Positions 24,530 through 52,259 of a DNA stretch of 64,000 nucleotides are shown here, piece by piece. Within the stretch, counting starts at the first letter, position 1. Each line of letters begins with the position of its first letter. The stretch covers positions 3,100,001 through 3,164,000 of the forward strand of contig NC_042998.1 in assembly GCF_006345805.1 (NCBI RefSeq). Reading direction: 5' to 3'. A model generated the notes under the pieces. That model was not told where the DNA came from, searched no databases, and worked only from the letters and a program-made list of their open reading frames with translations. Position numbers and translations under genes: made by a program. Origin of the DNA: Octopus sinensis. Its lineage: Eukaryota.

Positions 24530-24571
<42 letters not shown>

Positions 24572-28604: not shown

Positions 28605-28677
28605 GGGCTTGTGGCGCAATGGATAACGCGTCTGACTACGGATCAGAAGATTCCAGGTTCGAATCCTGGCAAGCTCG
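28605..28677 (+). tRNA. tRNA-Arg-ACG: tRNA-Arg(ACG), intact
   Basis: Identical to the consensus. Confidence 0.95.
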
Positions 28678-29407
28678 CAATAGTTTTATATCTCGTTTAG
28701 GGTAGTGAATACTTTATATGACGTATATCAGATGATTAGGTGTATATGTGTGAGTGTATATCAGCACGTGTGCATATCTGTGTTGTTGTCAGTAAATAAG
28801 AGTTAGCAAACAGATAAGTTCGTGAGTAGTAATTCCCGACAGTACTACGTGATACATGTTTCCATACGGGTCAGAAGATTCCGGATTCGAATCCTGACAA
28901 GTTCACATTCCTTTTAATCTTGAAACATTTGGGTAATGTTGTACGAATGATTATTTTAGACGATGCTTTTCAGAAGCGAAAGCGCGTCTTCAAGACTTTG
29001 CGTGTGCACGTATATACGAGCAGGCCTTTACGCGCATATTTGCCTGTCTATGGCAGGCAATGAAAGTAAAAGAATTCCTTCATAAGCATCAACTACTGAC
29101 TACGCGATACCCTGGGGCGCAATTCATAACGCGTCTAATTAAGGATCAGAAGATTCCATGGGCGAACTCTGGCAAAATCGGATGAATTTTACTTCAACAA
29201 CATCGGAGACAATGGTGCTAATAATATTTTCGTTGTTTTATTTTATAAATTATACGATCATCAGTGTGTGTCTGCATGTCTGTGTGAGCGCGGAATGTGT
29301 GCGCGAGCACGTGCGCATACGACGGGATGTCACCAGTTTTGCATGTCAACAACAAAAGTTAGTCTGTAAAGAAGTTAGAATATATGGAGTAGTGACATTC
29401 ATATTGA

Positions 29408-29480
29408 GGACTTGAGCCGCAATGGATAACGCGCCTGACTGCGGATCAGTAACTTCTACGTTCGAATCCTGGCTATCTCG
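29408..29480 (+). pseudogene. tRNA-Arg-derived pseudogene with GCG anticodon
   Basis: Paralogue of 26283-26355. Confidence 0.8.
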
Positions 29481-29890
29481 TATTTATTTTATTACGGAAA
29501 TATTTGGGACAACGTAGTGCTAATGAATATTTTAGAAGATACATTTCAGAAATTACAAGACATATATTCGTGCATACGTATAATCTTTGACAGTCACAGC
29601 CATTGACTACGCGAGGTCCTGTGGGGCAATGGATAACGTTCCTAATTACGAGTCAGAAGATTGCATGTTCGAATTCCCGCAAGGTCAAGATCGTTCAATT
29701 TCAGAAACGTCTGCGAAGGTGAGGCTAATAATTGTTTTGTTGATGTATTTCGGAAATTTATATAATCATGTGTGCGTGAGTGCGTGGGTGAGCGTGCACC
29801 CGAGCGAGCGTGATTGTGTCTTTGCTTATCACAAACACGAATTAATTAGTAAACAAATTAGAACATATGTAGAGAAATGACGTTCACCTA

Positions 29891-32800
29891 GGGCTTGTGA
29901 GGCAATGGATAACGCGTCTGACTACGGATCAGAAGATTCCAGGTTCGAATCCTGGCAAGCTCGTAATCGTTTTATATCTCATGAAGTTGGGGTAGTGAAT
30001 ATTTTGGATCTTTTCCTTTTGAACGGCAGTTTTCAACGTCAACAACACGGGTCAGTAGATAAGTTAGAGTATACGGAGTAACCGTTGTTATACCGAGGGC
30101 TTGTGGCGCAATGGATAACGCGTCTGACTACGGATCAGAAGATTCCAGGTTCGAATCCTGGAAAGCTCGTAATCGTTTTATATCTCATGAAGTTGGGGTA
30201 GTGAATATTTTGGATCTTTCCTTTTGAACGGCAGTTTTCAACGTCAACAACACGGGTCAGTAGATAAGTTAGAGTATACGGAGTAACCGTTGTTATACTG
30301 AGGGCTTGTGGACGCAATGGATAACGCGTCTGACTACGGATCAGAAGATTCCAGGTTCGAATCCTGGCAAGCTCGTAATCGTTTTATATCTCATGAAGTT
30401 GGGGTAGTGAATATTTTGGATCTTTTCCCTTGTGAACGGCAGTTTTCAACGTCAACAACACGGGTCAGTAGATAAGTTAGAGTATACGGAGTAACCATTG
30501 TTATACCGAGGGCTTGTGGTGCAATGGATAACGCGTCTGACTACGGATCAGAAGATTCCAGGTTCGAATCCTGGCAAGCTCGTATCGTTTTATATCTCAT
30601 GAAGTTGGGGTAGTGAATATTTTGGATCTTTTCCTTTTGAACGGCAGTTTTCAACGTCAACAACACGGGTCAGTAGATAAGTTAGAGTATACGGAGTAAC
30701 CGTTGTTATACCGAGGGCTTGTGGCGCAATGGATAACGCGTCTGACTACGGATCAGAAGATTCCAGGTTCGAATCCTGGCAAGCTCGTAATCGTTTTATA
30801 TCTCATGAAGTTGGGGTAGTGAATATTTTGGATCTTTTCCTTTTGAACGGCAGTTTTCAACGTCAACAACACGGGTCAGTAGATAAGTTAGAGTATACGG
30901 AGTAACCGTTGTTATACCGAGGGCTTGTGACGCAATGGATAACGCGTCTGACTACGGATCAGAAGATTCCAGGTTCGAATCCTGGCAAGTTCGTAATCGT
31001 TTTATATCTCATGAAGTTGGGGTAGTGAATATTTTGGATCTTTGACTTTTGAACGGCAGTTTTCAACGTCAACAACAAGGGTCAGTAGATAAGTTAGAGT
31101 ATACGGAGTAACCGTTGCTATACCGAGGGCTTGTGGCGCAATGGATAACGCGTCTGACTACGGATCAGAAGATTCCAGGTTCGAATCCTGGCAAGTTCGT
31201 AATCGTTTTATATCTCATGAAGTTGGGGTAGTGAATATTTTGGTTCTTTTTCCTTTTGAACGGCAGTTTTCAACGTCAACAACACGGGTCAGTAGATAAG
31301 TTAGAGTATACGGAGTAACCGTTGTTATACCGAGGGCTTGTGGCGCAATGGATAACGCGTCTGACTACGGATCAGAAGATTCCAGGTTCGAATCCTGGCA
31401 AGTTCGTAATCGTTTTATATCTCATGAAGTTGGGGTAGTGAATATTTTCTTTTTTCCTTTTGAACAGCAGTTTTCAACGTCAACAACACGGGTCAGTAGC
31501 TAAGTTAGAGTATACGGAGTAACCGTTGTTATACCGAGGGCTTGTGGCGCAATGGATAACGCGTCTGACTACGGATCAGAAGATTCCAGGTTCGAATCCT
31601 GGCAAGCTCGTATTCGTTTTATATCTCATGAAGTTGGGGTAGTGAATATTTTGGTTCTTTTTCCTTTTGAACGGCAGTTTTCAACGTCAACAACACGGGT
31701 CAGTAGATAAGTTAGAGTATACGGAGTAACCGTTGTTATACCGAGGGCTTGTGGCGCAATGGATAACGCGTCTGACTACGGATCAGAAGATTCCAGGTTC
31801 GAATCCTGGCAAGCTCGTAATCGTTTTATATCTCATGAAGTTGGGGTAGTGAATATTTTGGATCTTTTCCTTTTGAACGGCAGTTTTCAACGTCAACAAC
31901 ACGGGTCAGTAGATAAGTTAGAGTATACGGAGTAACCGTTGTTATACCGAGGGCTTGTGACGCAATGGATAACGCGTCTGACTACGGATCAGAAGATTCC
32001 AGGTTCGAATCCTGGCAAGCTCGTATTCGTTTTATATCTCATGAAGTTGGGGTAGTGAATATTTTGGATGTTTTTCCTTTTGAACGGCAGTTTTCAACGT
32101 CAACAACAAGGGTCAGTAGATAAGTTAGAGTATACGGAGTAACCGTTGTTATACCGAGGGCTTGTGGCGCAATGGATAACGCGTCTGACTACGGATCAGA
32201 AGATTCCAGGTTCGAATCCTGACAAGCTCGTATTCGTTTTATATCTCATGAAGTTGGGGTAGTGAATATTTTGGATATTTTCCTTTTGAACGGCAGTTTT
32301 CAACGTCAACAACATGGGTCAGTAGATAAGTTAGAGTATACGGAGTAACCATTGTTATACCGAGGGCTTGTGGCGCAATGGATAACGCGTCTGACTACGG
32401 ATCAGAAGATTCCTGTTCGAATCCTGGCAAGCTCGTAATCATTTTATATCTCATGAAGTTGGGGTAGTGAATATTTTGGACGTTTTCCTTTTGAACGGCA
32501 GTTTTCAACGTCAACAACATGGGTCAGTAGATAAGTTAGAGTATACGGAGTAACCATTGTTATACCGAGGGCTTGTGACGCAATGGATAACGCGTCTGAC
32601 TACGGATCAGAAGATTCCAGGTTCGAATCCTGGCAAGCTCGTAATCGTTTTATATCTCACGAAGTTGGGGTAGTGAATATTTTAGATCTTTTCCTTTTGA
32701 ACGGCAGTTTTCAGCGTCAACAACACGGGTCAGTAGATAAGTTAGAGTATACGGAGTAACCGTTGTTATACCGAGGGCTTGTGGCGCAATGGATAACGCG

Positions 32801-35800
32801 TCTGACTACGGATCAGAAGATTCCAGGTTCGAATCCTGACAAGCTCGTATTCGTTTTATATCTCATGAAGTTGGGGTAGTGAATATTTTGGATATTTTCC
32901 TTTTGAACGGCAGTTTTCAACGTCAACAACACGGGTCAGTAGATAAGTTAGAGTATACGGAGTAACCGTTGTTATACCGAGGGCTTGTGGGGCAATGGAT
33001 AACGCGTCTGACTACGGATCAGAAGATTCCAGGTTCGAATCCTGGCAAGGTCGCATTCGTTTATATCTCATGAAGTTGGGGTAGTGAATATTTTGGATGT
33101 TTTTCCTTTTGATTGGCAGTTTTCAACGTCAACAACACGGGTCAGTAGATAAGTTAGAGTATACGGAGTAACCATTGCTATACCGAGGGCTTGTTGCGCA
33201 ATGGATAACGCGTCTGACTACGGATCAGAAGATTCCAGGTTCGAATCCTGGCAAGCTCGTAATCATTTTATATCTCATGAAGTTGGGGTAGTGAATATTT
33301 TGGACGTTTTTCCTTTTGAACGGCAGTCTTCAACGTCAACAACATGGGTCAGTAGATAAGTTAGAGTATACGGAGTAACCATTGTTATACCGAGGGCTTG
33401 TGACGCAATGGATAACGCGTCTGACTACGGATCAGAAGATTCCAGGTTCGAATCCTGGCAAGCTCGTAATCGTTTTATATCTCATGAAGTTGGGGTAGTG
33501 AATATTTTGGATCTTTTCGTTTTGAACGGCAGTTTTCAACGTCAACAACACGGGTCAGTAGATAAGTTAGAGTATACGGAGTAACCGTTGTTATACCGAG
33601 GGCTTGTGGCGCAATGGATAACGCGTCTGACTACGGATCAGAAGATTCCAGGTTCGAATCCTGGCAAGCTCGTAATCGTTTTATACCTCATGAAGTTGGG
33701 GAAGTGAATATTTTGGATCTTTTCCTTTTGAACGGCAGTTTTCAACGTCAACAACACGGGACAGTAGATAAGTTAGAGTATACGGAGTAACCGTTGTTAT
33801 ACCGAGGGCTTGTGGCGCAATGGATCACGCGTCTGACTACGGATCAGAAGATTCCAGGTTCTAATCCTGGCAAGTTCGTAATCGTTTTATATCTCATGAA
33901 GTTGGGGTAGTGAATATTTTGGTTCTTCTTCCTTTTGAACGGCAGTTTTCAACGTCAACAACACGGGTCAGTAGATAAGTTAGAGTATACGGAGTAACCG
34001 TTGTTATACCGAGGGCTTGTGGAGCAATGGATAACGCGTCTGACTACGGATCAGAAGATTCCAGATTCGAATCCTGGCAAGCTCGTATTCGTTTTATATC
34101 TCATGAAGTTGGGGTAGTGAATATTTTGGATGTTTTTCCTTTTGAACGGCAGTCTTCAACGTCAACAACATGGGTCAGTAGATAAGTTAGAGTATACGGA
34201 GTAACCGTTGTTGTACCGAGGGCTTGTGACGCAATGGATAACGCGTCTGACTACGGATCAGAAGATTCCAGGTTCGAATCCTGGCAAGCTCGTATTCGTT
34301 TTATATCTCATGAAGTTGGGGTAGTGAATATTTTGGATGTTTTTCCTTTTGAACGGCAGTTTTCAACGTCAACAACACGGGTCAGTAGATAAGCTAGAGT
34401 ATAAGGAGTAACCGTTGTTATACCGAGGACTTGTGGCGCAATGGATTCCAGGTTCGAACCCTGGGGAAATCGGATGCATCTTATTTCAGAAACATGGTGA
34501 GATGGTGCTAATGATATTTTTGTTGGTGAATATCTGAAGATAATGTAACCAAGTGTGTGCACGAGTGAATGTTTGGTGTGTGTGTGTGGTGTCTGTGTCT
34601 GTGTGTGTGTGTGTTTGGGTGTCCGTGTTTGTGAGTGACCGCAGGTGTGTCAGTATCTTTGTCTACAACAGGTGTTAGGCAGTAAAGACATTAGGAGATA
34701 AGTAGGAACGTTTGTAAACGTAGGGCTTGTGGCGCAATGGATAACGCGTCTGACTACGGATCAGAAGATTCCAGGTTCGAATCCTGGCAAGCTCGTAATC
34801 GTTTTATATCTCATGAAGTTGGGGTAGTGAATATTGGATCTTTCCTTGAACGGCAGTTTTCAGCGTCAACAACACGGGTCAGTAGATAAGTTAGAGTTAC
34901 GGAGTAACCGTTGTATATACCGAAGGCTTGTGGCGCAATGGATAACGCGTCTGACTACGGATCAGAAGATTCCAGGTTCGAATCCTGGAAAGCTCGTAAT
35001 CGTTTTATATCTCATGAAGTTGGGGTAGTGAATATTTTGGATCTTTTCCTTTTGAACGGCAGTTTTCAACGTCAACAACACGGGTCAGTAGATAAGTTAG
35101 AGTATACGAGAGTAACCGTTGTATACCGAGGGCTTGTGGCGCAATGGATAACGCGTCTGACTACGGATCAGAAGATTCCAGGTTCGAATCCTGGCAAGCT
35201 CGTAATCTTTTTTATATCTCATGAGTTGGGGTAGTGTGGGGTAGTGAATATTTTGGATCTTTTTCCTTGTGAACGGCAGTTTTCAACGTCAACAACACGG
35301 GTCAGTAGATAAGTTAGAGTATACGGAGAGTAACCTGTTATACCGAGGGCTTGTGGTGCAATGGATAACGCGTCTGACTACGGATCAGAAGATTCCAGGT
35401 TCGAATCCTGGCAAGCTCGTAATCGTTATATTCTCATGAAGTTGGGGTAGTGAATATTTTGGATCTTTTCATTTGAACGGCAGTTTTCAACGTCAACAAC
35501 ACACGGGTCAGTAGATAAGTTAGAGTATACGGAGTAACCGTTGTGTTATACCGAGGACTTGTGACGCAATGGATAACGCGTCTGACTACGGATCAGAAGA
35601 TTCCAGGTTCGAATCCTGGCAAGTTCGTAATCGTTTTATATCTCATGAAGTGGGGTAGTGAATATTTTGGATCTTTGACTTTTGAACGGCAGTTTTCAAC
35701 GTCAACAACAAGGGTCAGTAGATAAGTTAGAGTATAGGAGTAACCGGTGTTATACCGAGGGCTTGTGGAGCAATGGATAACGCGTCTGACTACGGATCAG

Positions 35801-38800
35801 AAGATTCCAGGTTCGAATCCTGGCAAGCTCGTAATCGTTTTATATCTCATGAAGTTGGGGGGTAGTGAATATTTTGATGTCTTTTCTTTTGAACGGCAGT
35901 TTTCAACGTCAAACACAGGGTCAGTAGATAAGTTAGAGTATACGGAGTACCGTTGTTATACCGAGGGCTTGTGACGCAATGGATAACGCGTCTGACTACG
36001 GATCAGAAGATTCCAGGTTCGAATCCTGGCAAGCTCGTATTCGTTTTATATCTCATGAAGTTGGGGTGGTGGTAGTGAATATTTTGGATGTTTTTCCTTT
36101 TGAACGGCAGTTTTCAACGTCAACAACACGGGTCAGTAGATAAGTTAGAGTATATACGGAGTAACCGTTGTCATACGAGGGCTTGTGGCGCAATGGATAA
36201 CGCGTCTGACTACGGATCAGAAGATTCCAGGTTCGAATCCTGGCAAGTTCGTAATCGTTTTATATCTCATGAAGTTGGGGTTGGGTAGTGAATATTTGGT
36301 TCTTTTTCCTTTTGAACGGCAGTTTTCAACGTCAACAACAGGGTCAGTAGATAAGTTAGAGTATACGGAGTAACCGTTGTTATACCGAGGGCTTGTGGCG
36401 CAATGGATAACGCGTCTGACTACGGATCAGAAGATTCCAGGTTCGAATCCTGGCAAGCTCGTATCGTTTTATCTCATGAAGTGGGGGGTAGTGAATATTT
36501 TGGTTCTTTTTCCTTTTGAACGGCAGTTTTCAACGTCAACAACACGGGTCAGTAGATAAGTTAGAGTATACGAAGTAACCGTTGTTATACCGAGGGCTTG
36601 TGGGGCAATGGATAACGCGTCTGACTACGGATCAGAAGATTCCAGGTTCGAATCCTGGCAAGCTCGTAATCGTTTTATATCTCATGAAGTGGGGTAGTGA
36701 ATATTTTGGATCTTTTCCTTTTGAACGGCAGTTTTCAACGTCAACAACACGGGTCAGTAGATAAGTTAGAGTATACGGAGTAACCGTTGTTATACCGAGG
36801 GCTTGTGGCGCAATGGATAACGCGTCTGACTACGGATCAGAAGATTCCAGGTTCGAATCCTGGCAAGCTCGTAATCGTTTTATATCTCATGAAGTTGGGG
36901 TAGTGAATATTTTGGATCTTTTCCTTTTGAACGGCAGTTTTCAACGTCAACAACACGGGTCAGTAGATAAGTTAGAGTATACGGAGTAACCGTTGTTATA
37001 CCGAGGGCTTGTGACGCAATGGATAACGCGTCTGACTACGGATCAGAAGATTCCAGGTTCGAATCCTGGCAAGCTCGTATTCGTTTTATATCTCATGAAG
37101 TTGGGGTAGTGAATATTTTGGATGTTTTTCCTTTTGAACGGCAGTTTTCAACGTCAACAACAAGGGTCAGTAGATAGATAGAGATACGAGTATACAGTAA
37201 CCGTTGTTATACCGAGGGCTTGTGGGGCAATGGATAACGCGTCTGACTACGGATCAGAAGATTCCAGGTTCGAATCCTGACAAGCTCGTATTCGTTTTAT
37301 ATCTCATGAAGTTGGGGTAGTGAATATTTTGGATATTTTCCTTTTGAACGGCAGTTTTCAACGTCAACAACACGGGTCAGTAGATAAGTTAGAGTATACG
37401 GAGTAACCGTTGTTATACCGAGGACTTGTGACGCAATGGATAACGCGTCTGACTACGGATCAGAAGATTCCAGGTTCGAATCCTGGCAAGTTCGTAATCG
37501 TTTTATATCTCATGAAGTTGAGGTAGTGAATATTTTGGATCTTTGACTTTTGAACGGCAGTTTTCAACGTCAACAACAAGGGTCAGTAGATAAGTTAGAG
37601 TATACGGAGTAACCGTTGTTATACCGAGGGCTTGTGGCGCAATGGATAACGCGTCTGACTACGGATCAGAAGATTCCAGGTTCGAATCCTGGCAAGTTCG
37701 TAATCGTTTTATCTCATGAAGTTGGGGTAGTGAAATTTTGGTTCTTTTTCCTTTTGAACGGCAGTTTTCAACGTCAACAACACGGGTCAGTAGATAAGTT
37801 AGAGTATACTGAGTAACCGTTGTTATACGAGGGCTTGTGGCGCAACGGATAACGCGTCTGACTACGGATCAGAAGATTCCAGGTTCGAATCCTGGCAAGC
37901 TCGCATTCGTTTTATATCTCATGAATAAGTGTGGGGTAGTGAATATTTTGGTTCTTTTTCTTTTCTTTTGAACGGCAGTTTTCAACGTCAACACGGGTCA
38001 GTAGATAAGTTAGAGTATACGGAGTAACCGTTGTTATACCGAGGGCTTGTGGCGCAATGGATAACGCGTCTGACTACGGATCAGAAGATTCCAGGTTCGA
38101 ATCCTGGCAAGCTCGTAATCGTTTTATATCATGAATGGGGTAGTGTTGGGGTAGTGAATATTTTGGTTCTTTTCCTTTTGAACGGCAGTTTTCAACGTCA
38201 ACAACACGGGTCAGTAGATAAGTTAGAGTATACGGAGTAACCGTGTTTATACCGAGGGCTTGTGGCGCAATGGATAACGCGTCTGACTACGGATCAGAAG
38301 ATTCCAGGTTCGAATCCTGGCAAGTTCGTAATCGTTTTATATCTCATGAAGTTGGGGTAGTGAATATTTTGGTTCTTTTTCCTTTTGAACAGCAGTTTTC
38401 AACGTCAACAACACGGGTCAGTAGCTAAGTTAGAGTATACTGAGTAACCGTTGTTATACCGAGGGCTTGTGGCGCAATGGATAACGCGTCTGACTACGGA
38501 TCAGAAGATTCCAGGTTCGAATCCTGGCAAGCTCGTATTCGTTTTATATCTCATGAAGTTGGGGTAGTGAATATTTTGGTTCTTTTTCCTTTTGAACGGC
38601 AGTTTTCAACGTCAACAACACGGGTCAGTAGATAAGTTAGAGTATACGGAGTAACCGTTGTTATACCGAGGGCTTGTGGGGCAATGGATAACGCGTCTGA
38701 CTACGGATCAGAAGATTCCAGGTTCGAATCTGGCAAGCTCTCGTAATCGTTTTATATCTCATGAAGTTGGGGTAGTGAATATTTTGATCTTTTCCTTTTG

Positions 38801-41800
38801 AACGGCAGTTTTCAACGTCAACACACGGGTCAGTAGATAAGTTAGAGTATACGAGAGTATACGGTAGTGTGTTATACCGAGGGCTTGTGACGCAATGGAT
38901 AACGCGTCTGACTACGGATCAGAAGATTCCAGGTTCGAATCCTGGCAAGCTCGTATTCGTTTTATATCTCATGAAGTTGGGGTAGTGAATATTTTGGATG
39001 TTTTTCCTTTTGAACGGCAGTTTTCAACGTCAACAACACGGGTCAGTAGATAAGTTAGAGTATACGGAGTAACCGTTGTTATACCGAGGGCTTGTGGCGC
39101 AATGGATAACGCGTCTGACTACGGATCAGAAGATTCCAGGTTCGAATCCTGGCAAGCTCGTAATCGTTTTATATCTCATGAAGTTGGGGTAGTGAATATT
39201 TTGGTTCTTTTTCCTTTTGAACGGCAGTTTTCAACGTCAACAACACGGGTCAGTAGATAAGTTAGAGTATACGGAGTAACCGTTGTTATACCGAGGGCTT
39301 GTGGCGCAATGGATAACGCGTCTGACTACGGATCAGAAGATTCCAGGTTCGAATCCTGGCAAGCTCGTATTCGTTTTATATCTCATGAAGTTGGGGTAGT
39401 GAATATTTTGGTTTTTTCCTTTTGAACGGCAGTTTCAACGTCAACAACAGGGTCAGTAGATAAGTTAGAGTATACGGAGTAACCGTTGTTATACCGAGGG
39501 CTTGTGGGGCAATGGATAACGCGTCTGACTACGGATCAGAAGATTCCAGGTTCGAATCCTGGCAAGCTCGTAATCGTTTTATATCTCATGAAGTTGGGGT
39601 AGTGAATATTTTTGATCTTTTCCTTTTGAACGGCAGTTTTCAACGTCAACAACACGGGTCAGTAGATAAGTTAGAGTATACGGAGTAACCGTTGTTATAC
39701 CGAGGGCTTGTGGCGCAATGGATAACGCGTCTGACTACGGATCAGAAGATTCCAGGTTCGAATCCTGGCAAGTTCGTAATCGTTTTATATCTCATGAAGT
39801 TGGGGTAGTGAATATTTTGGTTCTTTTTCCTTTTGAACAGCAGTTTTCAACGTCAACAACACGGGTCAGTAGCTAAGTTAGAGTATAAGGAGTAACCGTT
39901 GTTATACCGAGGGCTTGTGGCGCAATGGATAACGCGTCTGACTACGGATCAGAAGATTCCAGGTTCGAATCCTGGCAAGCTCGTAATCGTTTTATATCTC
40001 ATGAAGTTGGGGTAGTGAATATTTTGGTTCTTTTTCCTTTTGAACGGCAGTTTTCAACGTCAACAACACGGGTCAGTAGATAAGTTAGAGTATACGGAGT
40101 AACCGTTGTTATACCGAGGGCTTGTGGCGCAATGGATAACGCGTCTGACTACGGATCAGAAGATTCCAGGTTCGAATCCTGGCAAGCTCGTATTCGTTTT
40201 ATATCTCATGAAGTTGGGGTAGTGAATATTTTGGTTCTTTTTCCTTTTGAACGGCAGTTTTCAACGTCAACAACACGGGTCAGTAGATAAGTTAGAGTAT
40301 ACGGAGTAACCGTTGTTATACCGAGGGCTTGTGGGGCAATGGATAACGCGTCTGACTACGGATCAGAAGATTCCAGGTTCGAATCCTGGCAAGCTCGTAT
40401 TCGTTTTATATCTCATGAAGTTGGGGTAGTGAATATTTTGGTTCTTTTCCTTTTGAACGGCAGTTTTCAACGTCAACAACACGGGTCAGTAGATAAGTTA
40501 GAGTATACGGAGTAACCGTTGTTATACCGAGGGCTTGTGGCGCAATGGATAACGCGTCTGACTACGGATCAGAAGATTCCAGGTTCGAATCCTGGCAAGC
40601 TCGTAATCGTTTTATATCTCATGAAGTTGGGGTAGTGAATATTTTGGTTCTTTTCCTTTGAACGGCAGTTTTCAACGTCAACAACACGGGTCAGTAGATA
40701 AGTTAGAGTATACGGAGTAACCGTTGTTATACCGAGGGCTTGTGACGCAATGGATAACGCGTCTGACTACGGATCAGAAGATTCCAGGTTCGAATCCTGG
40801 CAAGCTCGTATTCGTTTTATATCTCATGAAGTTGGGGTAGTGAATATTTTGGATGTTTTTCCTTTTGAACGGCAGTTTTCAACGTCAACAACAAGGGTCA
40901 GTAGATAAGTTAGAGTATACGGAGTAACCGTTGTTATACCGAGGGCTTGTGGCGCAATGGATAACGCGTCTGACTACGGATCAGAAGATTCCAGGTTCGA
41001 ATCCTGGCAAGTTCGTAATCGTTTTATATCTCATGAAGTTGGGGTAGTGAATATTTTGGATCTTTTCCTTTTGAACGGCAGTTTTCAACGTCAACAACAC
41101 GGGTCAGTAGATAAGTTAGAGTATACGGAGTAACCGTTGTTATACCGAGGGCTTGTGGCGCAATGGATAACGCGTCTGACTACGGATCAGAAGATTCCAG
41201 GTTCGAATCCTGGCAAGCTCGTATTCGTTTTATATCTCATGAAGTTGGGGTAGTGAATATTTTGGTTCTTTTTCCTTTTGAACGGCAGTTTTCAACGTCA
41301 ACAACACGGGTCAGTAGATAAGTTAGAGTATACGGAGTAACCGTTGTTATACCGAGGGCTTGTGGCGCAATGGATAACGCGTCTGACTACGGATCAGAAG
41401 ATTCCAGGTTCGAATCCTGGCAAGCTCGTATTCGTTTTATATCTCATGAAGTTGGGGTAGTGAATATTTTGGTTCTTTTTCCTTTTGAACGGCAGTTTTC
41501 AACGTCAACAACACGGGTCAGTAGATAAGTTAGAGTATACGGAGTAACCGTTGTTATACCGAGGGCTTGTGGCGCAATGGATAACGCGTCTGACTACGGA
41601 TCAGAAGATTCCAGGTTCGAATCCTGGCAAGCTCGTAATCGTTTTATATCTCATGAAGTTGGGGTGGGTAGTGAATATTTTGGATATTTTCCTTTTGAAC
41701 GGCAGTTTTCAACGTCAACAACACGGGTCAGTAGATAAGTTAGAGTATACGGAGTAACCGGTGTTATACCGAGGGCTTGTGGAGCAATGGATAACGCGTC

Positions 41801-44800
41801 TGACTACGGATCAGAAGATTCCAGATTCGAATCCTGGCAAGCTCGTATTCGTTTTATATCTCATGAAGTTGGGGTGGGTAGTGAATATTTTGATCTTTTC
41901 CTTTTGAACGGCAGCAGTTTTCAACGTCAACAACATGGGTCAGTAGATAAGTTAGAGTATACGGAGTAACCGTTGTTGTACCGAGGGCTTGTGACGCAAT
42001 GGATAACGCGTCTGACTACGGATCAGAAGATTCCAGGTTCGAATCCTGGCAAGCTCGTATTCGTTTTATATCTCATGAATTTGGGGTTGTGAATATTTTG
42101 GATGTTTTTCCTTTTGAACGGCAGTTTTCAACGTCAACAACACGGGTCAGTAGATAAGCTAGAGTATAAGGAGTAACCGTTGTTATACCGAGGACTTGTG
42201 GCGCAATGGATTCCAGGTTCGAACACTGGGGAAATCGGATGCATCTTATTTCAGAAACATGGTGGAGATTGGTGCTAATGATATTTTTGTTGGTGAATAT
42301 CTGAAGATAATGTAACCAAGTGTGTGCACGAGTGAATGTTTGTGTGTGTGTGTGTCTGTGTCTGTGTGTGTGTGTTTGGGTGTCCGTGTTTGTGAGTGAC
42401 CGCAGGTGTGTCAGTATCTTTGTCTACAACAGGTGTTAGGCAGTAAAGACATTAGGAGATAAGTAGGAACGTTTGGTAAACGTAGGGCTTGTGGCGCAAT
42501 GGATAACGCGTCTGACTACGGATCAGAAGATTCCAGGTTCGAATCCTGGCAAGCTCGTAATCGTTTTATATCTCATGAAGTTGGGGTAGTGAATATTTTG
42601 GATCTTTTCCTTTTGAACGGCAGTTTTCAGCGTCAACAACACGGGTCAGTAGATAAGTTAGAGTATACGGAGTAACCGTTGTTATACCGAGGGCTTGTGG
42701 CGCAATGGATAACGCGTCTGACTACGCATCAGAAGATTCCAGGTTCGAATCCTGGCAAGCTCGTAATCGTTTTATATCTCATGAAGTTGGGGTAGTGAAT
42801 ATTTTGGATGTTTTTCCTTTTGAACGGCAGTCTTCAACGTCAACAACATGGGTCAGTAGATAAGTTAGAGTATACGGAGTAACCGTTGTTATACTGAGGG
42901 CTTGTGGCGCAATGGATAACGCGTCTGACTACGGATCAGAAGATTCCAGGTTCGAATCCTGGCAAGCTCGTAATCGTTTTATATCTCATGAAGTTGGGGT
43001 AGTGAATATTTTGGATATTTTCCTTTTGAACGGCAGTTTTCAACGTCAACAACACGGGTCAGTAGATAAGTTAGAGTATACGGAGTAACCGTTGTTATAC
43101 CGAGGGCTTGTGGAGCAATGGATAACGCGTCTGACTACGGATCAGAAGATTCCAGATTCGAATCCTGGCAAGCTCGTATTCGTTTTATATCTCATGAAGT
43201 TGGGGTAGTGAATATTTTGGATGTTTTTCCTTTTGAACGGCAGTCTTCAACGTCAACAACATGGGTCAGTAGATAAGTTAGAGTATACGGAGTAACCGTT
43301 GTTGTACCGAGGGCTTGTGACGCAATGGATAACGCGTCTGACTACGGATCAGAAGATTCCAGGTTCGAATCCTGGCAAGCTCGTATTCGTTTTATATCTC
43401 ATGAATTTGGGGTTGTGAATATTTTGGATGTTTTTCCTTTTGAACGGCAGTTTTCAACGTCAACAACACGGGTCAGTAGATAAGCTAGAGTATAAGGAGT
43501 AACCGTTGTTATACCGAGGACTTGTGGCGCAATGGATTCCAGGTTCGAACACTGGGGAAATCGGATGCATCTTTTCAGAAACATGGTGGAGATTGGTGCT
43601 AATGATATTTGTTGGTGAATATCTGAAGATAATGTAACCAAGTGTGTGCACGAGTGAATGTTTGTGTGTGTGTGTGTCTGTGTCTGTGTGTGTGGTTTGG
43701 GTGTCCGTGTTTGTGAGTGACCGCAGGTGTGTCAGTATCTTTGTCTACAACAGGTGTTAGGCAGTAAAGACATTAGGAGATAAGTAGGAACGTTTGGTAA
43801 ACGTAGGGCTTGTGGCGCAATGGATAACGCGTCTGACTACGGATCAGAAGATTCCAGGTTCGAATCCTGGCAAGCTCGTAATCGTTTTATATCTCATGAA
43901 GTTGGGGTAGTGAATATTTTGGATCTTTTCCCTTGTGAACGGCAGTTTTCAACGTCAACAACACGGGTCAGTAGATAAGTTAGAGTATACGGAGTAACCG
44001 TTGTTATACCGAGGCTTGTGGTGCAATGGATAACGCGTCTGACTACGGATCAGAAGATTCCAGGTTCGAATCCTGGCAAGCTCGTAATCGTTTTATATCT
44101 CATGAAGTTGGGGTAGTGAATATTTTGGATCTTTTCCTTTTGAACGGCAGTTTTCAACGTCAACAACACGGGTCAGTAGATAAGTTAGAGTATACGGAGT
44201 AACCGTTGTTATACCGAGGGCTTGTGGAGCAATGGATAACGCGTCTGACTACGGATCAGAAGATTCCAGGTTCGAATCCTGGCAAGTTCGTAATCGTTTT
44301 ATATCTCATGAAGTTGGGGTAGTGAATATTTTGGATCTTTTCCTTTTGAACGGCAGTTTTCAACGTCAACAACAAGGGTCAGTAGATAAGTTAGAGTATA
44401 CGGAGTAACCGTTGTTATACCGAGGGCTTGTGGCGCAATGGATAACGCGTCTGACTACGGATCAGAAGATTCCAGGTTCGAATCCTGGCAAGCTCGTATT
44501 CGTTTTATATCTCATGAAGTTGGGGTAGTGAATATTTTGGATCTTTTCCTTTTGAACGGCAGTTTTCAACGTCAACAACACGGGTCAGTAGATAAGTTAG
44601 AGTATACGGAGTAACCGTTGTTATACCGAGGGCTTGTGGGGCAATGGATAACGCGTCTGACTACGGATCAGAAGATTCCAGGTTCGAATCCTGGCAAGCT
44701 CGTAATCGTTTTATATCTCATGAAGTTGGGTAGTGAATATTTTGGATCTTTTCCTTTTGAACGGCAGTTTTCAACGTCAACAACTGGGTCAGTAGATAAG

Positions 44801-47800
44801 TTAGAGTATACGGAGTAACCGTTGTTATACCGAGGGCTTGTGGGGCAATGGATAACGCGTCTGACTACGGATCAGTAGATTCCAGGTTCGAATCCTGGCA
44901 AGCTCGTAATCGTTTTATATCTCATGAAGTTGGGGTAGTGAATATTTTGGATCTGTTCCCTTGTGAACGGCAGTTTTCAACGTCAACAACACGGGTCAGT
45001 AGATAAGTTAGAGTATACGGAGTAACCATTGTTATACCGAGGGCTTGTGGTGCAATGGATAACGCGTCTGACTACGGATCAGAAGATTCCAGGTTCGAAT
45101 CCTGGCAAGCTCGTAATCGTTTTATATCTCATGAAGTTGGGGTAGTGAATATTTTGGATCTTTTCCTTTTGAACGGCAGTTTTCAACGTCAACAACACGG
45201 GTCAGTAGATAAGTTAGAGTATACGGAGTAACCGTTGTTATACCGAGGGCTTGTGGCGCAATGGATAACGCGTCTGACTACGGATCAGAAGATTCCAGGT
45301 TCGAATCCTGGCAAGCTCGTAATCGTTTTATATCTCATGAAGTTGGGGTAGTGAATATTTTGGATCTTTTTCTTTGAACGGCTTGTTTCAACGTCAACAA
45401 CAAGGGTCAGTAGATAAGTTAGAGTATACGGAGTAACCGTTGTTATACCGAGGGCTTGTGGCACAATGGATAACGCGTCTGACTACGGATCAGAAGATTC
45501 CAGGTTCGAATCCTGGCAAGCTCGTATTCGTTTTATATCTCATGAAGTTGGGGTAGTGAATATTTTGGATATTTTCCTTTTGAACGGCAGTTTTCAACGT
45601 CAACAACACGGTCAGTAGATAAGTTAGAGTATACGGAGTAACCGTTGTTATACCGAGGGCTTGTGGCGCAATGGATAACGCGTCTGACTACGGATCAGAA
45701 GATTCCAGGTTCGAATCCTGGCAAGCTCGTATTCGTTTTATATCTCATGAAGTTGGGGTAGTGAATATTTTGGCGTTTTCCTTTTGAACGGCAGTTTTCA
45801 ACGTCAACAACATGGGTCAGTAGATAAGTTAGAGTATACGGAGTAACCGTTGTTATACCGAGGGCTTGTGGCGCAATGATAACGCGTCTGACTACGGATT
45901 AGAAGATTCCAGGTTCGAATCCTGGCAAGCTCGTATTCGTTTTATATCTCATGAAGTTGGGGTAGTGAATATTTTGGATATCTTCCTTTTAACGGCAGTT
46001 TTCAACGTCAACAACACGGTCAGCAGATAAGTTAGAGTATACGGAGTAACCGTTGTTATACCGAGGGCTTGTGGCGCAATGGATAACGCGTCTGACTACG
46101 GATCAGAAGATTCCAGGTTCGAATCCTGGCAAGCTCGTAATCATTTTATATCTCATGAAGTTGGGGTAGTGAATATTTTGGACGTTTTTCCTTTTGAACG
46201 GCAGTCTTCAACGTCAACAACATGGGTCAGTAGATAAGTTAGAGTATACGGAGTAACCGTTGTTGTACCGAGGGCTTGTGATGCAATGGATAACGCGTCT
46301 GACTACGGATCAGAAGATTCCAGGTTCGAATCCTGGCAAGCTCGTATTCGTTTTATATCTCATGAAGTTGGGGTAGTGAATATTTTGGATGTTTTTCCCT
46401 TTGAACGGCAGTTTTCAACGTCAACAACACGGGTCAGTAGATAAGCTAGAGTATACGGAGTAACCGTTGTTATACCGAGGGCTTGTGGCGCAATGGATTC
46501 CAGGTTCGAACCCTGGGGAAATCGGATGCATCTTATTTCAGAAACATGGTGGAGATTGGTGCTAATGATATTTTTGTTGGTGAATATCTGAAGATAATGT
46601 AACCAAGTGTGTGCACGAGTGTATGTTTGTTTGTGTGTGTGTGTGTGTCTGTGTCTGTGTGTGTGTGTTTGGGTGTCCGTGTCTGTGAGTGACCGCAGGT
46701 GTGTCAGTATCTTTTTCTACAACAGGTGTTAGGCAGTAAAGACATTAAGAGATAAGTAGGAACGCTTGGTAAACGTAGGGCTTGTGGCGCAATGGATAAC
46801 GCGTCTGACTACGGATCAGAAGATTCCAGGTTCGAATCCTGGCAAGCTCGTATTCGTTTTATATCTCATGAAGTTGGGGTAGTGAATATTTTGGATATTT
46901 TCCTTTTGAACGGCAGTTTTCAACGTCAACAACACGGGTCAGTAGATAAGTTAGAGTATACGGAGTAACCGTTGTTATACCGAGGGCTTGTGGCGCAATG
47001 GATAACGCGTCTGACTACGGATCAGAAGATTCCAGGTTCGAATCCTGGCAAGCTCGCATTCGTTTTATATCTCATGAAGTTGGGGTAGTGAATATTTTGG
47101 ACGTTTTTCCTTTTGAACGGCAGTTTTCAACGTCAACAACATGGGTCAGTAGATAAGTTAGAGTATACGGAGTAACCGTTGTTATACCGAGGGCTTGTGG
47201 CGCAATGCATAACGCGTCTGACTACGGATTAGAAGATTCCAGGTTCGAATCCTGGCAAGCTCGTATTCGTTTTATATCTCATGAAGTTGGGGTAGTGAAT
47301 ATTTTGGATATCTTCCTTTTGAACGGCAGTTTTCAACGTCAACAACACGGGTCAGTAGATAAGTTAGAGTATACGGAGTAACCGTTGTTATACCGAGGGC
47401 TTGTGGCGCAATGGATAACGCGTCTGACTACGGATCAGAAGATTCCAGGTTCGAATCCTGGCAAGCTCGTAATCATTTTATATCTCATGAAGTTGGGGTA
47501 GTGAATATTTTGGACGTTTTTCCTTTTGAACGGCAGTCTTCAACGTCAACAACATGGGTCAGTAGATAAGTTAGAGTATACGGGGTAACCGGTGTTATAC
47601 CGAGGCTTGTGATGCAATGGATAACGCGTCTGACTACGGATCAGAAGATTCCAGGTTCGAATCCTGGCAAGCTCGTATTCGTTTTATATCTCATGAAGTT
47701 GGGGTAGTGAATATTTTGGATGTTTTTCCCTTTGAACGGCAGTTTTCAACGTCAACAACACGGGTCAGTAGATAAGCTAGAGTATACGGAGTAACCGTTG

Positions 47801-49500
47801 TTATACCGAGGGCTTGTGGCGCAATGGATTCCCCTGTTCGAACCCTGGGGAATCGGATGCATCTTATTTCAGAAACATGGTGGAGATTGTGCTAATGATA
47901 TTTTTGTTGGTGAATATCTGAAGATAATGTAACCAAGTGTGTGCACGAGTGTATGTTTGTTTGTGTGGTGTGTGTGTGTCTGTGTCTGTGTTTGTGTGTT
48001 TTTGGTGTCGTGTCTGTGAGTGACCGCAGGTGTGTCAGTATCTTTTTCTACAACAGGTGTTAGGCAGTAAGGACATTAAGAGATAAGTAGGAACGCTTGG
48101 TAAACGTAGGGCTTGTGGCGCAATGGATAACGCGTCTGACTACGGATCAGAAGATTCCAGGTTCGAATCCTGGCAAGCTCGTATTCGTTTTATATCTCAT
48201 GAGTTGGGGTAGTGAATATTTTGGATATTTTCCTTTTGAACGGCAGTTTTCAACGTCAACAACACGGGTCAGTAGATAAGTTAGAGTATACGGAGTAACC
48301 GTTGTTATACCGAGGGCTTGTGGCGCAATGGATAACGCGTCTGACTACGGATCAGAAGATTCCAGGTTCGAATCTGGCAAGCTCGCATTCGTTTTATATC
48401 TCATGAAGTTGGGGTAGTGAATATTTTGGACGTTTTTCCTTTTGAACGGCAGTTTTGAACGTCAACAACATGGGTCAGTAGATAAGTTAGAGTATACGGA
48501 GTAACCGTTGTTATACCGAGGGCTTGTGGGGCAATGCATAACGCGTCTGACTACGGATTAGAAGATTCCAGGTTCGAATCCTGGCAAGCTCGTATTCGTT
48601 TTATATCTCATGAAGTTGGGGTAGTGAATATTTTGGATATCTTCCTTTTGAACGGCAGTTTCCAACGTCAACAACACGGTCATAGAGAAGTTAGAGTATA
48701 CGGAGTAACCGTTGTTATACCGAGGGCTTGTGGCGCAATGGATAACGCGTCTGACTACGGATCAGAAGATTCCAGGTTCGAATCCTGGCAAGCTCGTAAT
48801 CATTTTATATCTCATGAAGTTGGGGTAGTGAATATTTTGGACGTTTTTCCTTTTGAACGGCAGTCTTCAACGTCAACAACATGGTCGTAGATAATTTAGA
48901 GTATACGCGGGTAACCGTTGTTGTACCGAGGGCTTGTGATGCAAGGATAGCGTCTACTGACTACGGATCAGAAGATTCCAGGTTCGAATCCTGGCAAGCT
49001 CGTATTCGTTTTATATATCTCATGAAGTTGGGGTAGTGAATATTTTGGATGTTTTTCCCTTTGAACGGCAGTTTTCAACGTCAACAACACGGGTCAGTAG
49101 ATAAGCTAGAGTATACGGAGTAACCGTTGTTATACCGAGGGCTTGTGGCGCAATGGATTCCAGGTTCGAACCTGGGAAATCGGATGCATCTATTTCAGAA
49201 CATGGTGGATTGGTGCTAATGATATTTGTGGTGAATATCTGAAGATAATGTACCAAGTGTGTGCACGAGTGTATGTTTTTGTTTGTGTGTGTGTGTTGTC
49301 TGTGTCTGTGTGTGTGTGTTTGGGTGTCCGTGTCTGTGAGTGACCGCAGGTGTGTCAGTATCTTTTTCGACAACAGGTGTTGGCAGTAAAGACATTAGGA
49401 GATAAGTAGGAACGTTTGGTAAACGTAGGGCTTGTGGCGCAATGGATAACGCGTCTGACTACGGATCAGAAGATTCCAGGTTCGAATCCTGGCAAGCTCG
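29891..49500 (+). tRNA. tRNA-Arg-ACG: Head-to-tail tandem array of tRNA-Arg(ACG) genes, ~206-bp monomer, about 93 units (~87 full-length)
   Basis: tRNA starts at 29891, 30097, 30302, 30510, 30715, 30921 ... 49428. Monomer = tRNA 73 + trailer 42 with TTTT terminator + TIR-like 28 + 5' flank 63. Confidence 0.95.
34427..34722 (+). pseudogene. Array-interrupting module: tRNA with 27-nt deletion plus ~250-bp old-type spacer; repeated at 42192, 43518, 46479, 47810 and 49139
   Basis: GCAATGGAT|TCCAGGTTCGAA junction (GAT microhomology) removes the anticodon arm; the spacer is homologous to 50240-50381. Confidence 0.9.
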
Positions 49501-49961
49501 TAATCGTTTTATATCTCGGGAAGTGAATATTTTTATGATGTGGAATTTATACATCTGGTGATTATATGCATGTACTTATATATTTTTGAGTGAGTATCAG
49601 CAACTGTGCATATCTGTGTTGTTGACAGTAAATAATAATTGGCAGAAAGATGAGTGTGTAAGTAGTAACTCCCAACAGAGCAATGCATTACACGTTTTCG
49701 TACAGGTCAGAAGATTCCGGGTTCGAATCCTGATATGTTCATATTCATTTTATTTTGAAAACATTTGGTACGTTGTACTAATGATTATTTTAGATGATGT
49801 ATTTCAGAAATGAAAGCATGTCAGGTTAATATATAGATCTATATATTAACCGCATGCCATCAAGATTATACGTGTGCACGTATATTCGTGCGAGCCTTCA
49901 CGCGCATGTTTGCCTTTCTCTGGCAGGCAATGAAAGTAAAAGAATTCCTTCATAAGCATCA

Positions 49962-52210: not shown

Positions 52211-52259
<49 letters not shown>

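What the first reader, a model, noticed from the sequence alone, without database searches (positions are those of the whole stretch)
29891..49500. A tRNA satellite built from a tRNA gene fused to a transposon end: every 206-bp monomer carries a MITE TIR
In each monomer, 42 nt after the tRNA, lies GGATCTTTTCCTTTTGAACGGCAGTTTT (e.g. 30830-30857). This is 26/28 identical to the TIR of the MITE seen at 19439, 51956 and 58294. It follows AATATTTT, the same 8-mer that is the TSD of the MITE at 51956. After the last unit (~49525) AATATTTT is followed by ordinary spacer, i.e. the empty site. The founder monomer therefore arose when a MITE inserted behind a tRNA gene and was truncated to its TIR and fused to the next 5' flank, and only this TIR-bearing unit expanded about 90-fold. 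Inference: the transposon end may have driven or seeded amplification (abortive or alternative-end transposition, circle formation and rolling-circle re-insertion). The array now interleaves ~90 Pol III promoters with ~87 potential transposase-binding ends.
Basis: partly seen in the sequence, partly recalled or inferred. Interest (0 to 1): 0.8.

Follow-up and report, generated by a model that had tools for sequence, protein, structure and literature searches.

The report
tRNA-Arg gene array carrying transposon scar
A young tandem array of 86 arginine-tRNA genes, probably in an octopus genome, carries in every 206-bp unit the truncated end of a small DNA transposon; this scar shows how the founding unit was made, but nothing indicates that it drove the amplification.

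Summary
Window 29891-49158 holds 86 head-to-tail units of about 206 bp. Each contains a tRNA-Arg(ACG) gene, then 42 nt of 3' flank ending in AATATTTT, then a 28-nt stretch that is 26/28 identical to the 29-nt terminal inverted repeat (TIR) of a 430-bp MITE. Three copies of that MITE lie in the window, each with an 8-bp target-site duplication. Shuffled sequence gives no such matches.

Paralogous flanks show the empty site. The relic is fused to the 5' flank of a diverged tRNA-like paralogue, which I call psi4. The join lies in a microhomology of up to 7 nt (CAGTTTT), so about 21 nt are unambiguously from the transposon.

The claim that the transposon end drove amplification is not supported:
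- All relics point the same way and none has an inverted partner.
- The inner 18 nt vary like ordinary spacer, and the outer 10 nt are the most variable part of the unit.
- The array is built from six blocks and a 1.33-kb higher-order repeat, as unequal exchange produces.
- The surrounding locus is an older tRNA array without the relic.

Best reading: an ordinary tandem tRNA array with a passenger scar from a Merlin-like MITE. Interest is modest.

The parts
29891..49158 (+). Tandem array of 86 short tRNA-Arg(ACG) units (about 206 bp) in six blocks of 22, 36, 5, 13, 5 and 5 units
   Evidence: TRF period 206/207; ARAGORN; unit census; mean pairwise identity 96.1%
30715..30787 (+). tRNA-Arg(ACG) gene of a canonical unit. 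A box TGGCGCAATGG and B box GGTTCGAATCC lie inside it, and a T4 run follows at +7
   Evidence: ARAGORN; the same 73-mer scores 62.8 bits against Rfam RF00005 where it occurs outside the array; the boxes and T-run were read. 30 of 86 array copies are identical to this 73-mer
30788..30829 (+). Type-1 3' flank of the tRNA, ending in the target 8-mer AATATTTT (30822-30829)
   Evidence: Homologous to the 3' flanks at 23676-24007, 27295-27622, 49501-49533 and 53729-53746, which continue as empty sites
30830..30850 (+). Unambiguous MITE TIR relic, GGATCTTTTCCTTTTGAACGG (19/21 to MITE TIR nt 1-21)
   Evidence: 0.00 matches in shuffles
30851..30857 (+). CAGTTTT: junction microhomology, present both in MITE TIR nt 22-28 and in the psi4 5' flank
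   Evidence: Alignment of the unit with the MITE ends and with 26180-, 29305- and 54300-. 7 nt are shared with 29334-29340, 6 nt with 26210-26215, and about 3 nt with the 54.3-kb paralogue
30858..30920 (+). 5' flank derived from the psi4-type tRNA-like paralogue (GTCAACAACA...AAGTTAGAGTATACGGAGTA...)
   Evidence: blastn-short hits at 26220/26247, 29345/29372 and 54343/54366; alignment
34427..34722 (+). Long spacer unit that closes block 1. It holds a hybrid truncated tRNA (5' 20 nt joined at GGAT|TCCAGG to the T arm of a psi5-type pseudo-tRNA), a (GT)n run, and the tRNA1-type 5' flank. Further copies lie at 42192-42484, 43518-43805, 46479-46777, 47810-48108 and 49139-49427
   Evidence: the six copies are 90-98% identical; none has a TIR relic
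45452..49427 (+). Three successive copies of a 1.33-kb higher-order repeat (5 units plus long spacer), with the same order of unit variants
   Evidence: Variant strings; 96.3-98.2% identity between the three copies, and 94-98% across all six block tails
49428..49533 (+). Last tRNA-Arg gene with a type-1 flank and an unoccupied target site (AATATTTT at 49526-49533, followed by TATGATG...)
19431..20827 (+). MITE copy 1 (19439-20819) with a perfect 8-bp target-site duplication, AAGAGATG. It carries an internal (AT)n run and a 347-bp GC-rich tandem repeat (about 2.3 copies)
   Evidence: TIR arms 19439-19467 and 20791-20819, 29 nt, 97% complementary
51948..52703 (-). MITE copy 2 (51956-52695, reversed relative to copies 1 and 3) with target-site duplication AATATTTT/GATATTTT. 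It sits behind a 5'-truncated tRNA (51865-51900)
52154..52472 (+). Segment copied into MITE copy 2: half of a pseudo-tRNA, a (GT)n run, a 5' flank, tRNA-Arg 52366-52438, and a 3' flank up to GTAGTGA
   Evidence: MITE homology stops at 52153 and resumes at 52473. The segment is 96.9% identical to 50200-50487. Junction microhomologies are ACG(C)GTCTAWT and GTGA
58286..58731 (+). MITE copy 3 (58294-58723, the 430-bp core alone) with target-site duplication ACTATCTG/ACCATCTG
21881..29890 (+). Older, diverged tandem array of 1.3-1.7-kb complex units, each with one intact tRNA-Arg and 3-4 tRNA-like relics spaced about 200-300 bp apart. No TIR relic. A similar stretch lies at 49428-57908
   Evidence: 66-95% identity between units; internal self-matches at offsets 261, 509, about 801-814 and about 1009
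29334..29407 (+). psi4-type 5' flank (CAGTTTTGCATGTCAACAACA...), the closest surviving paralogue of the unit's 5' flank. Others lie at 26209-26282 and 54332-54403

Best explanation
This is a young, head-to-tail array of tRNA-Arg(ACG) genes. By sequence, each unit is a complete Pol III unit with A box, B box and T-run terminator. It grew by ordinary unequal exchange, or slippage, between neighbouring tRNA copies. The transposon end in every unit is a passenger scar that records how the founder unit was made.

Proposed order of events:
1. The locus was already an old tRNA-Arg tandem array. It had diverged into complex units: tRNA1, then pseudo-tRNAs psi2 to psi5, then a (GT)n spacer (shown).
2. 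A 430-bp MITE with Merlin-like structure inserted at AATATTTT, 42 nt behind a tRNA1 (shown by the empty sites and by the match starting at the element's tip).
3. A deletion of roughly 1 kb ran from MITE nt about 22-28 to the 5' flank of psi4, across the microhomology CAGTTTT. It removed the rest of the MITE together with psi2 and psi3, and brought two tRNA-like genes to 206-bp spacing (the junction is shown; the deletion size and the end-joining or slippage mechanism are inferred).
4. Unequal exchange between the two 73-bp tRNA repeats created the 206-bp unit and then expanded it. A second small deletion (GGAT|TCCAGG) made the hybrid tRNA that closes each block (inferred from the anatomy).
5. 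Blocks consisting of units plus the long spacer were themselves duplicated as a 1.33-kb higher-order repeat. Runs of units then expanded independently, giving 86 units in 6 blocks (the structure is shown).

Function: a large local supply of tRNA-Arg(ACG) genes. Constraint on the tRNA part is mild but detectable. Whether the array is transcribed or silenced is unknown.
For: Founder anatomy. Chance is excluded.

The MITE is a real mobile element with TIRs and 8-bp target-site duplications. MITE copies are 89-95% identical while array units average 96.1%, so the MITE family is not younger than the array. The diverged paralogous flanks lack the relic, so the relic is a derived state.

Passenger status:
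- The inner 18 nt of the relic vary like other spacer (ratio 1.13, p=0.65) and the outer 10 nt are hypervariable (2.0 distinct substitutions per nt against 0.70, p=1e-4).
- All relics are on the + strand and none has an inverted mate.

Unequal-exchange signature:
- Six blocks all end in the same hybrid tRNA and long spacer.
- The block-final unit is always the GA(C/T)G...GGATG type, and a five-unit variant order recurs three times.
- The 1.33-kb units are 94-98% identical.

The locus amplifies tRNA units without any TIR.

Mild constraint on the tRNA part: 0.42 against 0.70 distinct substitutions per nt, p=0.017.

Precedent: Arabidopsis tRNA arrays are modelled as products of unequal crossing-over (PMC2886086).
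Against: - Only one array and one window were available, so it cannot be shown that TIR-free arrays of the same age exist elsewhere in the genome.
- The concentration of variants on the outer TIR nucleotides has no firm explanation.
- Two MITE insertions used the same 8-mer at paralogous positions of two diverged flank types. This hints at a target preference or at conversion, which the passenger model does not need but also does not explain.
- The microhomology is 7 nt in one paralogue, 6 nt in a second and only about 3 nt in the third. The true ancestral flank is not available.
- Only 30 of 86 tRNAs are canonical, so much of the array may be non-functional.
- Copy number and small indels depend on an assembly I cannot check. 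Block 2 shows 3% indels.
Confidence: 0.75

Rival explanations
1. The relic ends are still recognised by an active transposase. Repeated nicking or cutting at the tip of each relic raises the local double-strand-break rate, and hence unequal exchange, so that the TIR-bearing unit out-amplified its neighbours. This is a softened form of the reader's inference.
For: - Within the window, only the TIR-bearing unit reached 86 copies.
- Variants cluster at the outer 10 nt of the relic, next to where cleavage would occur.
- Merlin and MITE families with recent activity are reported in Octopus vulgaris (PMC13282606).
- TIRs in tandem elements have been proposed to expose arrays to more breaks and more unequal exchange (PMC5932611 section 19).
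Against: - The relic is at most 28 nt, of which only 21 are unambiguous. It carries two fixed differences from all six MITE ends and has lost all subterminal sequence.
- All relics are in direct orientation. Cut-and-paste DDE transposases generally need two synapsed ends (established knowledge).
- The variants are mostly base substitutions at TIR nt 3-5 plus a T-run length change, not the junction footprints that excision repair leaves.
- There is no conservation of the relic.
- The enrichment rests on roughly 6-8 mutational events and is partly inflated by alignment ambiguity around a T-run.
Confidence: 0.08
2. Alternative (reversed-ends or sister-chromatid) transposition, or circle formation followed by rolling-circle re-insertion, generated the first duplications.
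For: Reversed-ends transposition of maize Ac does generate tandem direct duplications (PMC3744419). Nothing in the window speaks for it directly.
Against: - That mechanism uses two transposon termini and leaves a transposon and target-site duplications at the duplication junction. Here each unit has one truncated end, one copy of AATATTTT, and a junction inside the element at a microhomology.
- A single rolling-circle burst predicts units that differ only by private mutations. Instead, variants are shared in ordered, multi-unit patterns, and the blocks include a 290-bp spacer.
Confidence: 0.03
3. The direction is reversed: the 28-mer is native tRNA flank, and the MITE acquired its ends from this array.
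For: The MITE does take up tRNA-locus DNA. Copy 2 holds a 319-bp tRNA unit.
Against: - Five diverged paralogous type-1 flanks run straight through the site without the 28-mer.
- The 28-mer begins exactly at the tip of an element that has 8-bp target-site duplications at three unrelated sites.
- MITE copies are more diverged from each other than the array units are.
Confidence: 0.02
4. The array's size or fine structure is an assembly artefact, with repeat copy number mis-estimated and indels arising from long-read noise.
For: Block 2 (34722-42211) shows 3% indels against 0% in most other blocks. Unit lengths of 201-217 bp cluster there.
Against: Ordered, shared variants and block-specific haplotypes are not what collapse or mis-expansion produces. 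The relic is present whatever the true copy number.
Confidence: 0.1

Closest known systems
Tandem nuclear tRNA gene arrays, e.g. the Arabidopsis thaliana chromosome 1 Ser/Tyr/Tyr array (27 x 1.5 kb), and the tRNA-Cys cluster in 0.4-kb units (PMC2886086, PMC7544208, PMC10701932)
   Same: Head-to-tail units each carry tRNA genes. They undergo concerted evolution and copy-number change, modelled as unequal crossing-over, and contain many degenerate copies.
   Different: This array is in an animal, probably an octopod. It has one tRNA per 206-bp unit, so it is far denser, with 86 units. The unit is a chimera made by a transposon insertion followed by a deletion. Expression and silencing state are unknown here.
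Satellite DNAs derived from transposons or MITEs (Xstir and miDNA4 in Xenopus, tandem-repeat-containing MITEs of bivalves, hobo and Bari1 tandem arrays; review PMC12628747; PMC5932611)
   Same: Transposon sequence is present in every unit of a tandem array. Microhomology-mediated deletion or duplication and unequal exchange are invoked.
   Different: In those cases the repeated unit is the transposon or its internal repeat. Here the transposon contributes only 21-28 nt, and the repeated unit is a host gene with its flanks. The review mentions no tRNA case.
Merlin superfamily DNA transposons and their MITEs (Feschotte 2004, as summarised in PMC8101967)
   Same: The MITE has 29-nt TIRs that begin 5'-GG (5 of 6 ends) and 8-bp target-site duplications (3 of 3). 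Some Merlin copies also carry internal tandem repeats, as copy 1 does here.
   Different: No transposase or autonomous partner was found, so the assignment rests on structure alone.
Reversed-ends (alternative) transposition of maize Ac/Ds, which makes tandem direct duplications (PMC3744419)
   Different: It needs two termini, and it leaves an element and target-site duplications at the junction. Neither is seen here.

Membership tests
Tandem tRNA gene array (clustered tDNA) | Repeated head-to-tail units, each containing a predicted tRNA gene in the same orientation | tested here: met
   87 tRNA-Arg(ACG) genes on the + strand at a 206-bp period
Tandem tRNA gene array (clustered tDNA) | Pol III signals intact (A box, B box, downstream T-run) | tested here: met
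   TGGCGCAATGG, GGTTCGAATCC and TTTT at +7 in the consensus unit. However, only 30 of 86 copies are canonical, and position 10/11 in the A box is polymorphic
Tandem tRNA gene array (clustered tDNA) | Copies are transcribed, or are epigenetically silenced as in Arabidopsis | not testable with these tools
   There are no expression or methylation data
Satellite DNA with higher-order repeat structure | Long homogeneous tandem array, with multi-unit blocks more similar to each other than neighbouring units are | tested here: met
   19 kb, with 96.1% mean unit identity. Copies of the 1.33-kb five-unit repeat are up to 98.2% identical and share variant order
Merlin-superfamily MITE | TIRs of 24-462 bp with a conserved terminal 5'-GG (PMC8101967) | tested here: met
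   29-nt TIR, 97% complementary. It starts GG at 5 of 6 ends and AG at 58723
Merlin-superfamily MITE | 8- or 9-bp target-site duplication | tested here: met
   8 bp at all three copies, matching 8/8, 7/8 and 7/8
Merlin-superfamily MITE | An autonomous partner with the same TIRs that encodes a DDE_Tnp_IS1595 transposase | not tested
   No transposase ORF with these TIRs lies in the window. Scans of public collections found nothing usable
hAT-superfamily MITE | 8-bp target-site duplication together with termini of the (C/T)A(G/A)NG type and target nTnnnnAn (recalled from established knowledge, not taken from a tool) | tested here: not met
   The 8-bp duplication is met, but the termini are GGATC and none of the three duplications fits nTnnnnAn on either strand
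Amplification by alternative transposition | Two transposon termini take part, and an element with a target-site duplication lies at each duplication junction (PMC3744419) | tested here: not met
   Each unit has one truncated end, all in direct orientation, and the junction lies inside the element at a microhomology
Functional transposase-binding ends | Sequence conservation of the relic above neutral spacer | tested here: not met
   Inner 18 nt: ratio 1.13, p=0.65. Outer 10 nt: 2.9-fold more variable

The most novel reading that the evidence does not exclude
The truncated Merlin-like ends remain substrates for nicking by a transposase that is still active in the genome. That would turn each of the 86 units into a break hot spot that speeds unequal exchange. 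It would explain both why the TIR-bearing unit alone expanded and why variants pile up on the outermost relic nucleotides. Together with MITE copy 2, which has copied in a whole tRNA-Arg unit, it would point to a two-way traffic between one transposon family and a Pol III gene locus.
Probability: 0.07. Interest if true: 0.75.

Novelty: new member of a known kind. Interest (0 to 1): 0.35.

Why it matters
The scar works as a built-in marker. It proves that all 86 units descend from a single founder, and it gives the order of events: insertion, microhomology deletion, unit expansion, block duplication. It thereby offers an unusually clean, stepwise example of how a gene-bearing satellite is born from an older, decayed array.

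For the biology of cephalopod genomes, it documents a very dense tRNA-Arg(ACG) array, and a MITE family that both scars the tRNA locus and copies from it.

It does not, on present evidence, reveal a new amplification mechanism.

Tried and rejected
- Chance match: rejected. Shuffles give 0.00 expected matches.
- MITE ends derived from the tRNA flank: rejected by the empty sites in diverged paralogues.
- hAT assignment of the MITE: the termini and target pattern do not fit, whereas the Merlin-type structural features do.
- Dada-type, tRNA-targeting transposons (recalled from memory): not pursued. Dada elements insert inside small-RNA genes and make 6-7-bp duplications. Here the duplications are 8 bp, and two of the four insertions are not associated with a tRNA.
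- Finding the source record or more of the locus by exact protein look-up of window ORFs: nothing on record.
- Finding related arrays through the translated array ORF (48534-48890): only generic translations of tRNA-Arg genes from other organisms, none with the relic.
- Finding MITE or autonomous copies in public metagenome contigs: the first TIR pattern gave no hit. A degenerate pattern gave one bacterial coding-sequence hit that is a chance match.
- Rfam scan of the flanks: only tRNA hits reach the gathering score. The miRNA-family hits lie over microsatellites and fall far below gathering.
- Organism: inferred only from a reverse-transcriptase ORF that is 91% identical to the representative of a 90%-identity cluster that also contains an Octopus vulgaris protein. 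No paper in the library describes nuclear tRNA arrays in octopus.


Full report
**1. What is there**

The window looks eukaryotic. It has abundant microsatellites, TTAGGG-like runs, a non-LTR reverse-transcriptase ORF and 101 tRNA-Arg(ACG) genes, all on the + strand. The reverse-transcriptase ORF (60091-61707, minus strand) is 91% identical to P0001. P0001 is the representative of a 90%-identity cluster that also contains an Octopus vulgaris protein. The source is therefore probably an octopod genome. This is an inference from one transposon protein, not a proof.

TRF reports a 206/207-bp period from 29886 to 49158. Cutting the sequence at the tRNA starts gives 86 short units and 6 long units:
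- The short units are 201-217 bp, with mode 206/207.
- The long units are 288-299 bp. They divide the array into blocks of 22, 36, 5, 13, 5 and 5 units.
- Mean pairwise identity between short units is 96.1%.

**2. The relic**

Every one of the 86 short units carries, 42 nt after the tRNA, a sequence whose consensus ancestor is GGATCTTTTCCTTTTGAACGGCAGTTTT. None of the long units carries it.

The 28-mer has 40 ungapped matches at up to 3 mismatches, against 0.00 in 100 shuffles. The remaining units differ mainly by a one-base change in T-run length. Against the six MITE ends it is 26/28 identical to three, 25/28 to two and 23/28 to one.

The MITE is a genuine mobile element:
- It has three copies with a 430-bp core that is 89-95% identical.
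- Its TIRs are 29 nt and 97% complementary.
- Its 8-bp target-site duplications lie at three unrelated sites: AAGAGATG/AAGAGATG, AATATTTT/GATATTTT and ACTATCTG/ACCATCTG.

TIRs of this length that begin 5'-GG, combined with 8-bp duplications, are the structural hallmarks given for the Merlin superfamily (PMC8101967). Merlin and MITE families with recent activity are reported in O. vulgaris (PMC13282606). No transposase was found, so 'Merlin-like' is a structural label only.

**3. How the founder unit was made**

The 42-nt 3' flank of the unit ends in AATATTTT. Diverged paralogues of this flank run straight through that point, as ...GGGGTAGTGA(A/G)TATTTT|TATGATGTG..., without the 28-mer. They lie at 23985-24007, 27600-27622, 49522-49533 (behind the last tRNA of the array), 50477-50494 and 53729-53746. 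The relic is therefore a derived insertion, and the match starts exactly at the element's tip.

The 63 nt downstream of the relic are not the usual 5' flank of the intact tRNA. They match the 5' flank of a degenerate tRNA-like paralogue that I call psi4, found at 26209-26282, 29334-29407 and 54332-54403.

That flank itself reads C(C/T)AGTTTTGCATGTCAACAACA, while the MITE TIR reads ...GGCAGTTTTT. The breakpoint therefore lies in a microhomology of up to 7 nt. Only 21 nt of the unit (19/21 identical) are unambiguously from the MITE.

A breakpoint inside the element at a microhomology is what end-joining or replication slippage produces. Transposase cleavage acts at the element's tip. From the layout of the neighbouring complex unit 28605-29890, the deletion removed about 0.4 kb of MITE and about 0.6 kb of host DNA, including psi2 and psi3 (inferred).

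**4. How it grew**

Each block ends in the same hybrid. The first 20 nt of the tRNA are joined at GGAT|TCCAGG to the T arm of a psi5-type pseudo-tRNA. A (GT)n run and the tRNA1-type 5' flank follow. The six long spacers are 90-98% identical.

Three features show that multi-unit segments were duplicated repeatedly, which is the expected footprint of unequal exchange:
- The unit before each spacer is always of one variant type, GA(C/T)G...GGATG.
- A five-unit order of variants recurs three times at 45452-49427.
- The 1.33-kb units (five short units plus spacer) are 94-98% identical.

A single rolling-circle burst would instead give units that differ only by private mutations.

The flanks of the array (21881-29890 and 49428-57908) are an older, diverged array of 1.3-1.7-kb complex units, 66-95% identical to each other. 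Each complex unit is itself made of tRNA-like relics spaced about 200-300 bp apart. None of these contains the relic. The locus therefore built tRNA arrays before, and without, the TIR.

**5. Is the relic doing anything?**

Counting distinct substitutions per nucleotide across the 86 units gives:

| Segment | Distinct substitutions per nt |
|---|---|
| tRNA | 0.42 |
| 3' flank | 0.67 |
| 5' flank | 0.70 |
| TIR inner 18 nt | 0.78 |
| TIR outer 10 nt | 2.0 |

- The tRNA is mildly constrained (p=0.017).
- The inner relic behaves like the rest of the spacer (p=0.65).
- The outer relic is the most variable part of the unit (p=1e-4, partly inflated by alignment ambiguity next to a T-run).

All relics point the same way and none has an inverted partner. 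Nothing therefore suggests that the relic is maintained as a transposase site.

The geometry required for alternative transposition is two termini, with an element and a duplication left at the junction (PMC3744419). That geometry is absent here.

A softer idea remains possible. Relic ends might act as break sites that raise unequal exchange, as proposed for tandem TIR elements (PMC5932611 section 19). It would fit the variant cluster at the relic tip. However, those variants are substitutions at TIR nt 3-5 plus a T-run change, not excision footprints. I give this idea about 8%.

**6. Comparison and novelty**

Tandem tRNA arrays shaped by unequal crossing-over are known, for example in Arabidopsis (PMC2886086, PMC7544208, PMC10701932). 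Satellites that contain transposon sequence are also well known (PMC12628747).

What is particular here is the combination. The unit is a very dense, single-tRNA unit that is a chimera of gene, flank, TIR stub and a paralogue's flank. I found no description of such a case, nor of nuclear tRNA arrays in octopus, in the searchable library. I rate it a new member of a known kind: a neat and informative example, not a new mechanism.

**7. Limits**

- Only one window was available, and no access to the rest of the genome or to related species.
- Searches of public collections for the TIR and for translated array ORFs gave nothing useful.
- Copy number and small indels depend on the assembly.

Noticed in passing
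window 51956-52695, insert at 52154-52472: MITE copy 2 has copied in a 319-bp piece of the tRNA locus: half a pseudo-tRNA, a (GT)n run, a 5' flank, an apparently intact tRNA-Arg at 52366-52438, and part of its 3' flank. The piece is 96.9% identical to 50200-50487, 2 kb upstream, with microhomologies at both junctions. It looks like template switching during break repair. If this copy is mobile, it could carry a tRNA gene elsewhere.
   Followed up: partly
window 19497-20440 (inside MITE copy 1): MITE copy 1 carries a roughly 115-bp AT-rich microsatellite and a GC-rich 347-bp repeat (about 2.3 copies, 96-98% identical), neither of which is present in the other two copies. No Rfam family matches it.
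   Followed up: partly
window 51948-51955 and every array unit (e.g. 30822-30829): Two MITE insertions used the same 8-mer, AATATTTT, at paralogous positions of two clearly diverged tRNA 3' flank types. This could be a target preference, a hot spot behind Pol III genes, or gene conversion. It remains unresolved.
   Followed up: partly
array units, unit positions 116-125 (e.g. 30830-30839): The outermost 10 nt of the relic are hypervariable. The haplotypes are GGATC, GGTTC+T, GGATG+T, GGATA, GGACG+T and GGATATC, giving about 2.0 distinct substitutions per nt against 0.7 in the rest of the spacer.
   Followed up: partly
array units, tRNA positions 10-11 and 70: The D-stem/A-box positions G10 and C11 are multi-allelic: G10A in about 14 copies, and C11 changed to G, T or A. 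C70T occurs in about 13 copies. Only 30 of 86 tRNAs are canonical. These variants could serve as tags for array-derived transcripts.
   Followed up: partly
window 34427-34475, 42192-42240, 43518-43566, 46479-46527, 47810-47858, 49139-49185: Each block ends in a hybrid, internally deleted tRNA. The 5' 20 nt of the array tRNA are joined at GGAT|TCCAGG to the T arm of a different pseudo-tRNA type.
   Followed up: yes
window 21881-29890 and 49428-57908: An older tRNA-Arg array of 1.3-1.7-kb complex units, each with one intact gene and 3-4 decayed tRNA-like copies about 200-300 bp apart. This shows earlier rounds of short-period amplification and decay at the same locus.
   Followed up: yes
window 34722-42211: Block 2 has 3% indels in the TRF alignment against 0% in most other blocks, and it contains most of the odd unit lengths (201-217 bp). 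This may be consensus noise in the assembly.
   Followed up: no
window 60091-61707 (-): A 538-aa ORF with a reverse-transcriptase domain (RVT_1, 1e-30), from a non-LTR element. It is 91% identical to the representative of a 90%-identity cluster that also contains an Octopus vulgaris protein. This is the only clue to the organism.
   Followed up: yes
window 10330-10668 (-): A 112-aa ORF that by eye resembles the C-terminal part of a mariner-type transposase (...NARPH...YSPD.A.SD.H.F...). It has no Pfam hit at E<=0.001.
   Followed up: partly
window 49994-50080 and MITE interiors (e.g. 20483-20530, 58395-58430): Degenerate telomere-like (TTAGGG/TTAGGGT) runs occur both in the MITE core and in a separate 90-bp block between tRNA units.
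   Followed up: no
window 8001-10000: Strong G-over-C skew (0.54) over 2 kb, with TG/GCG-rich short repeats. It was not examined.
   Followed up: no
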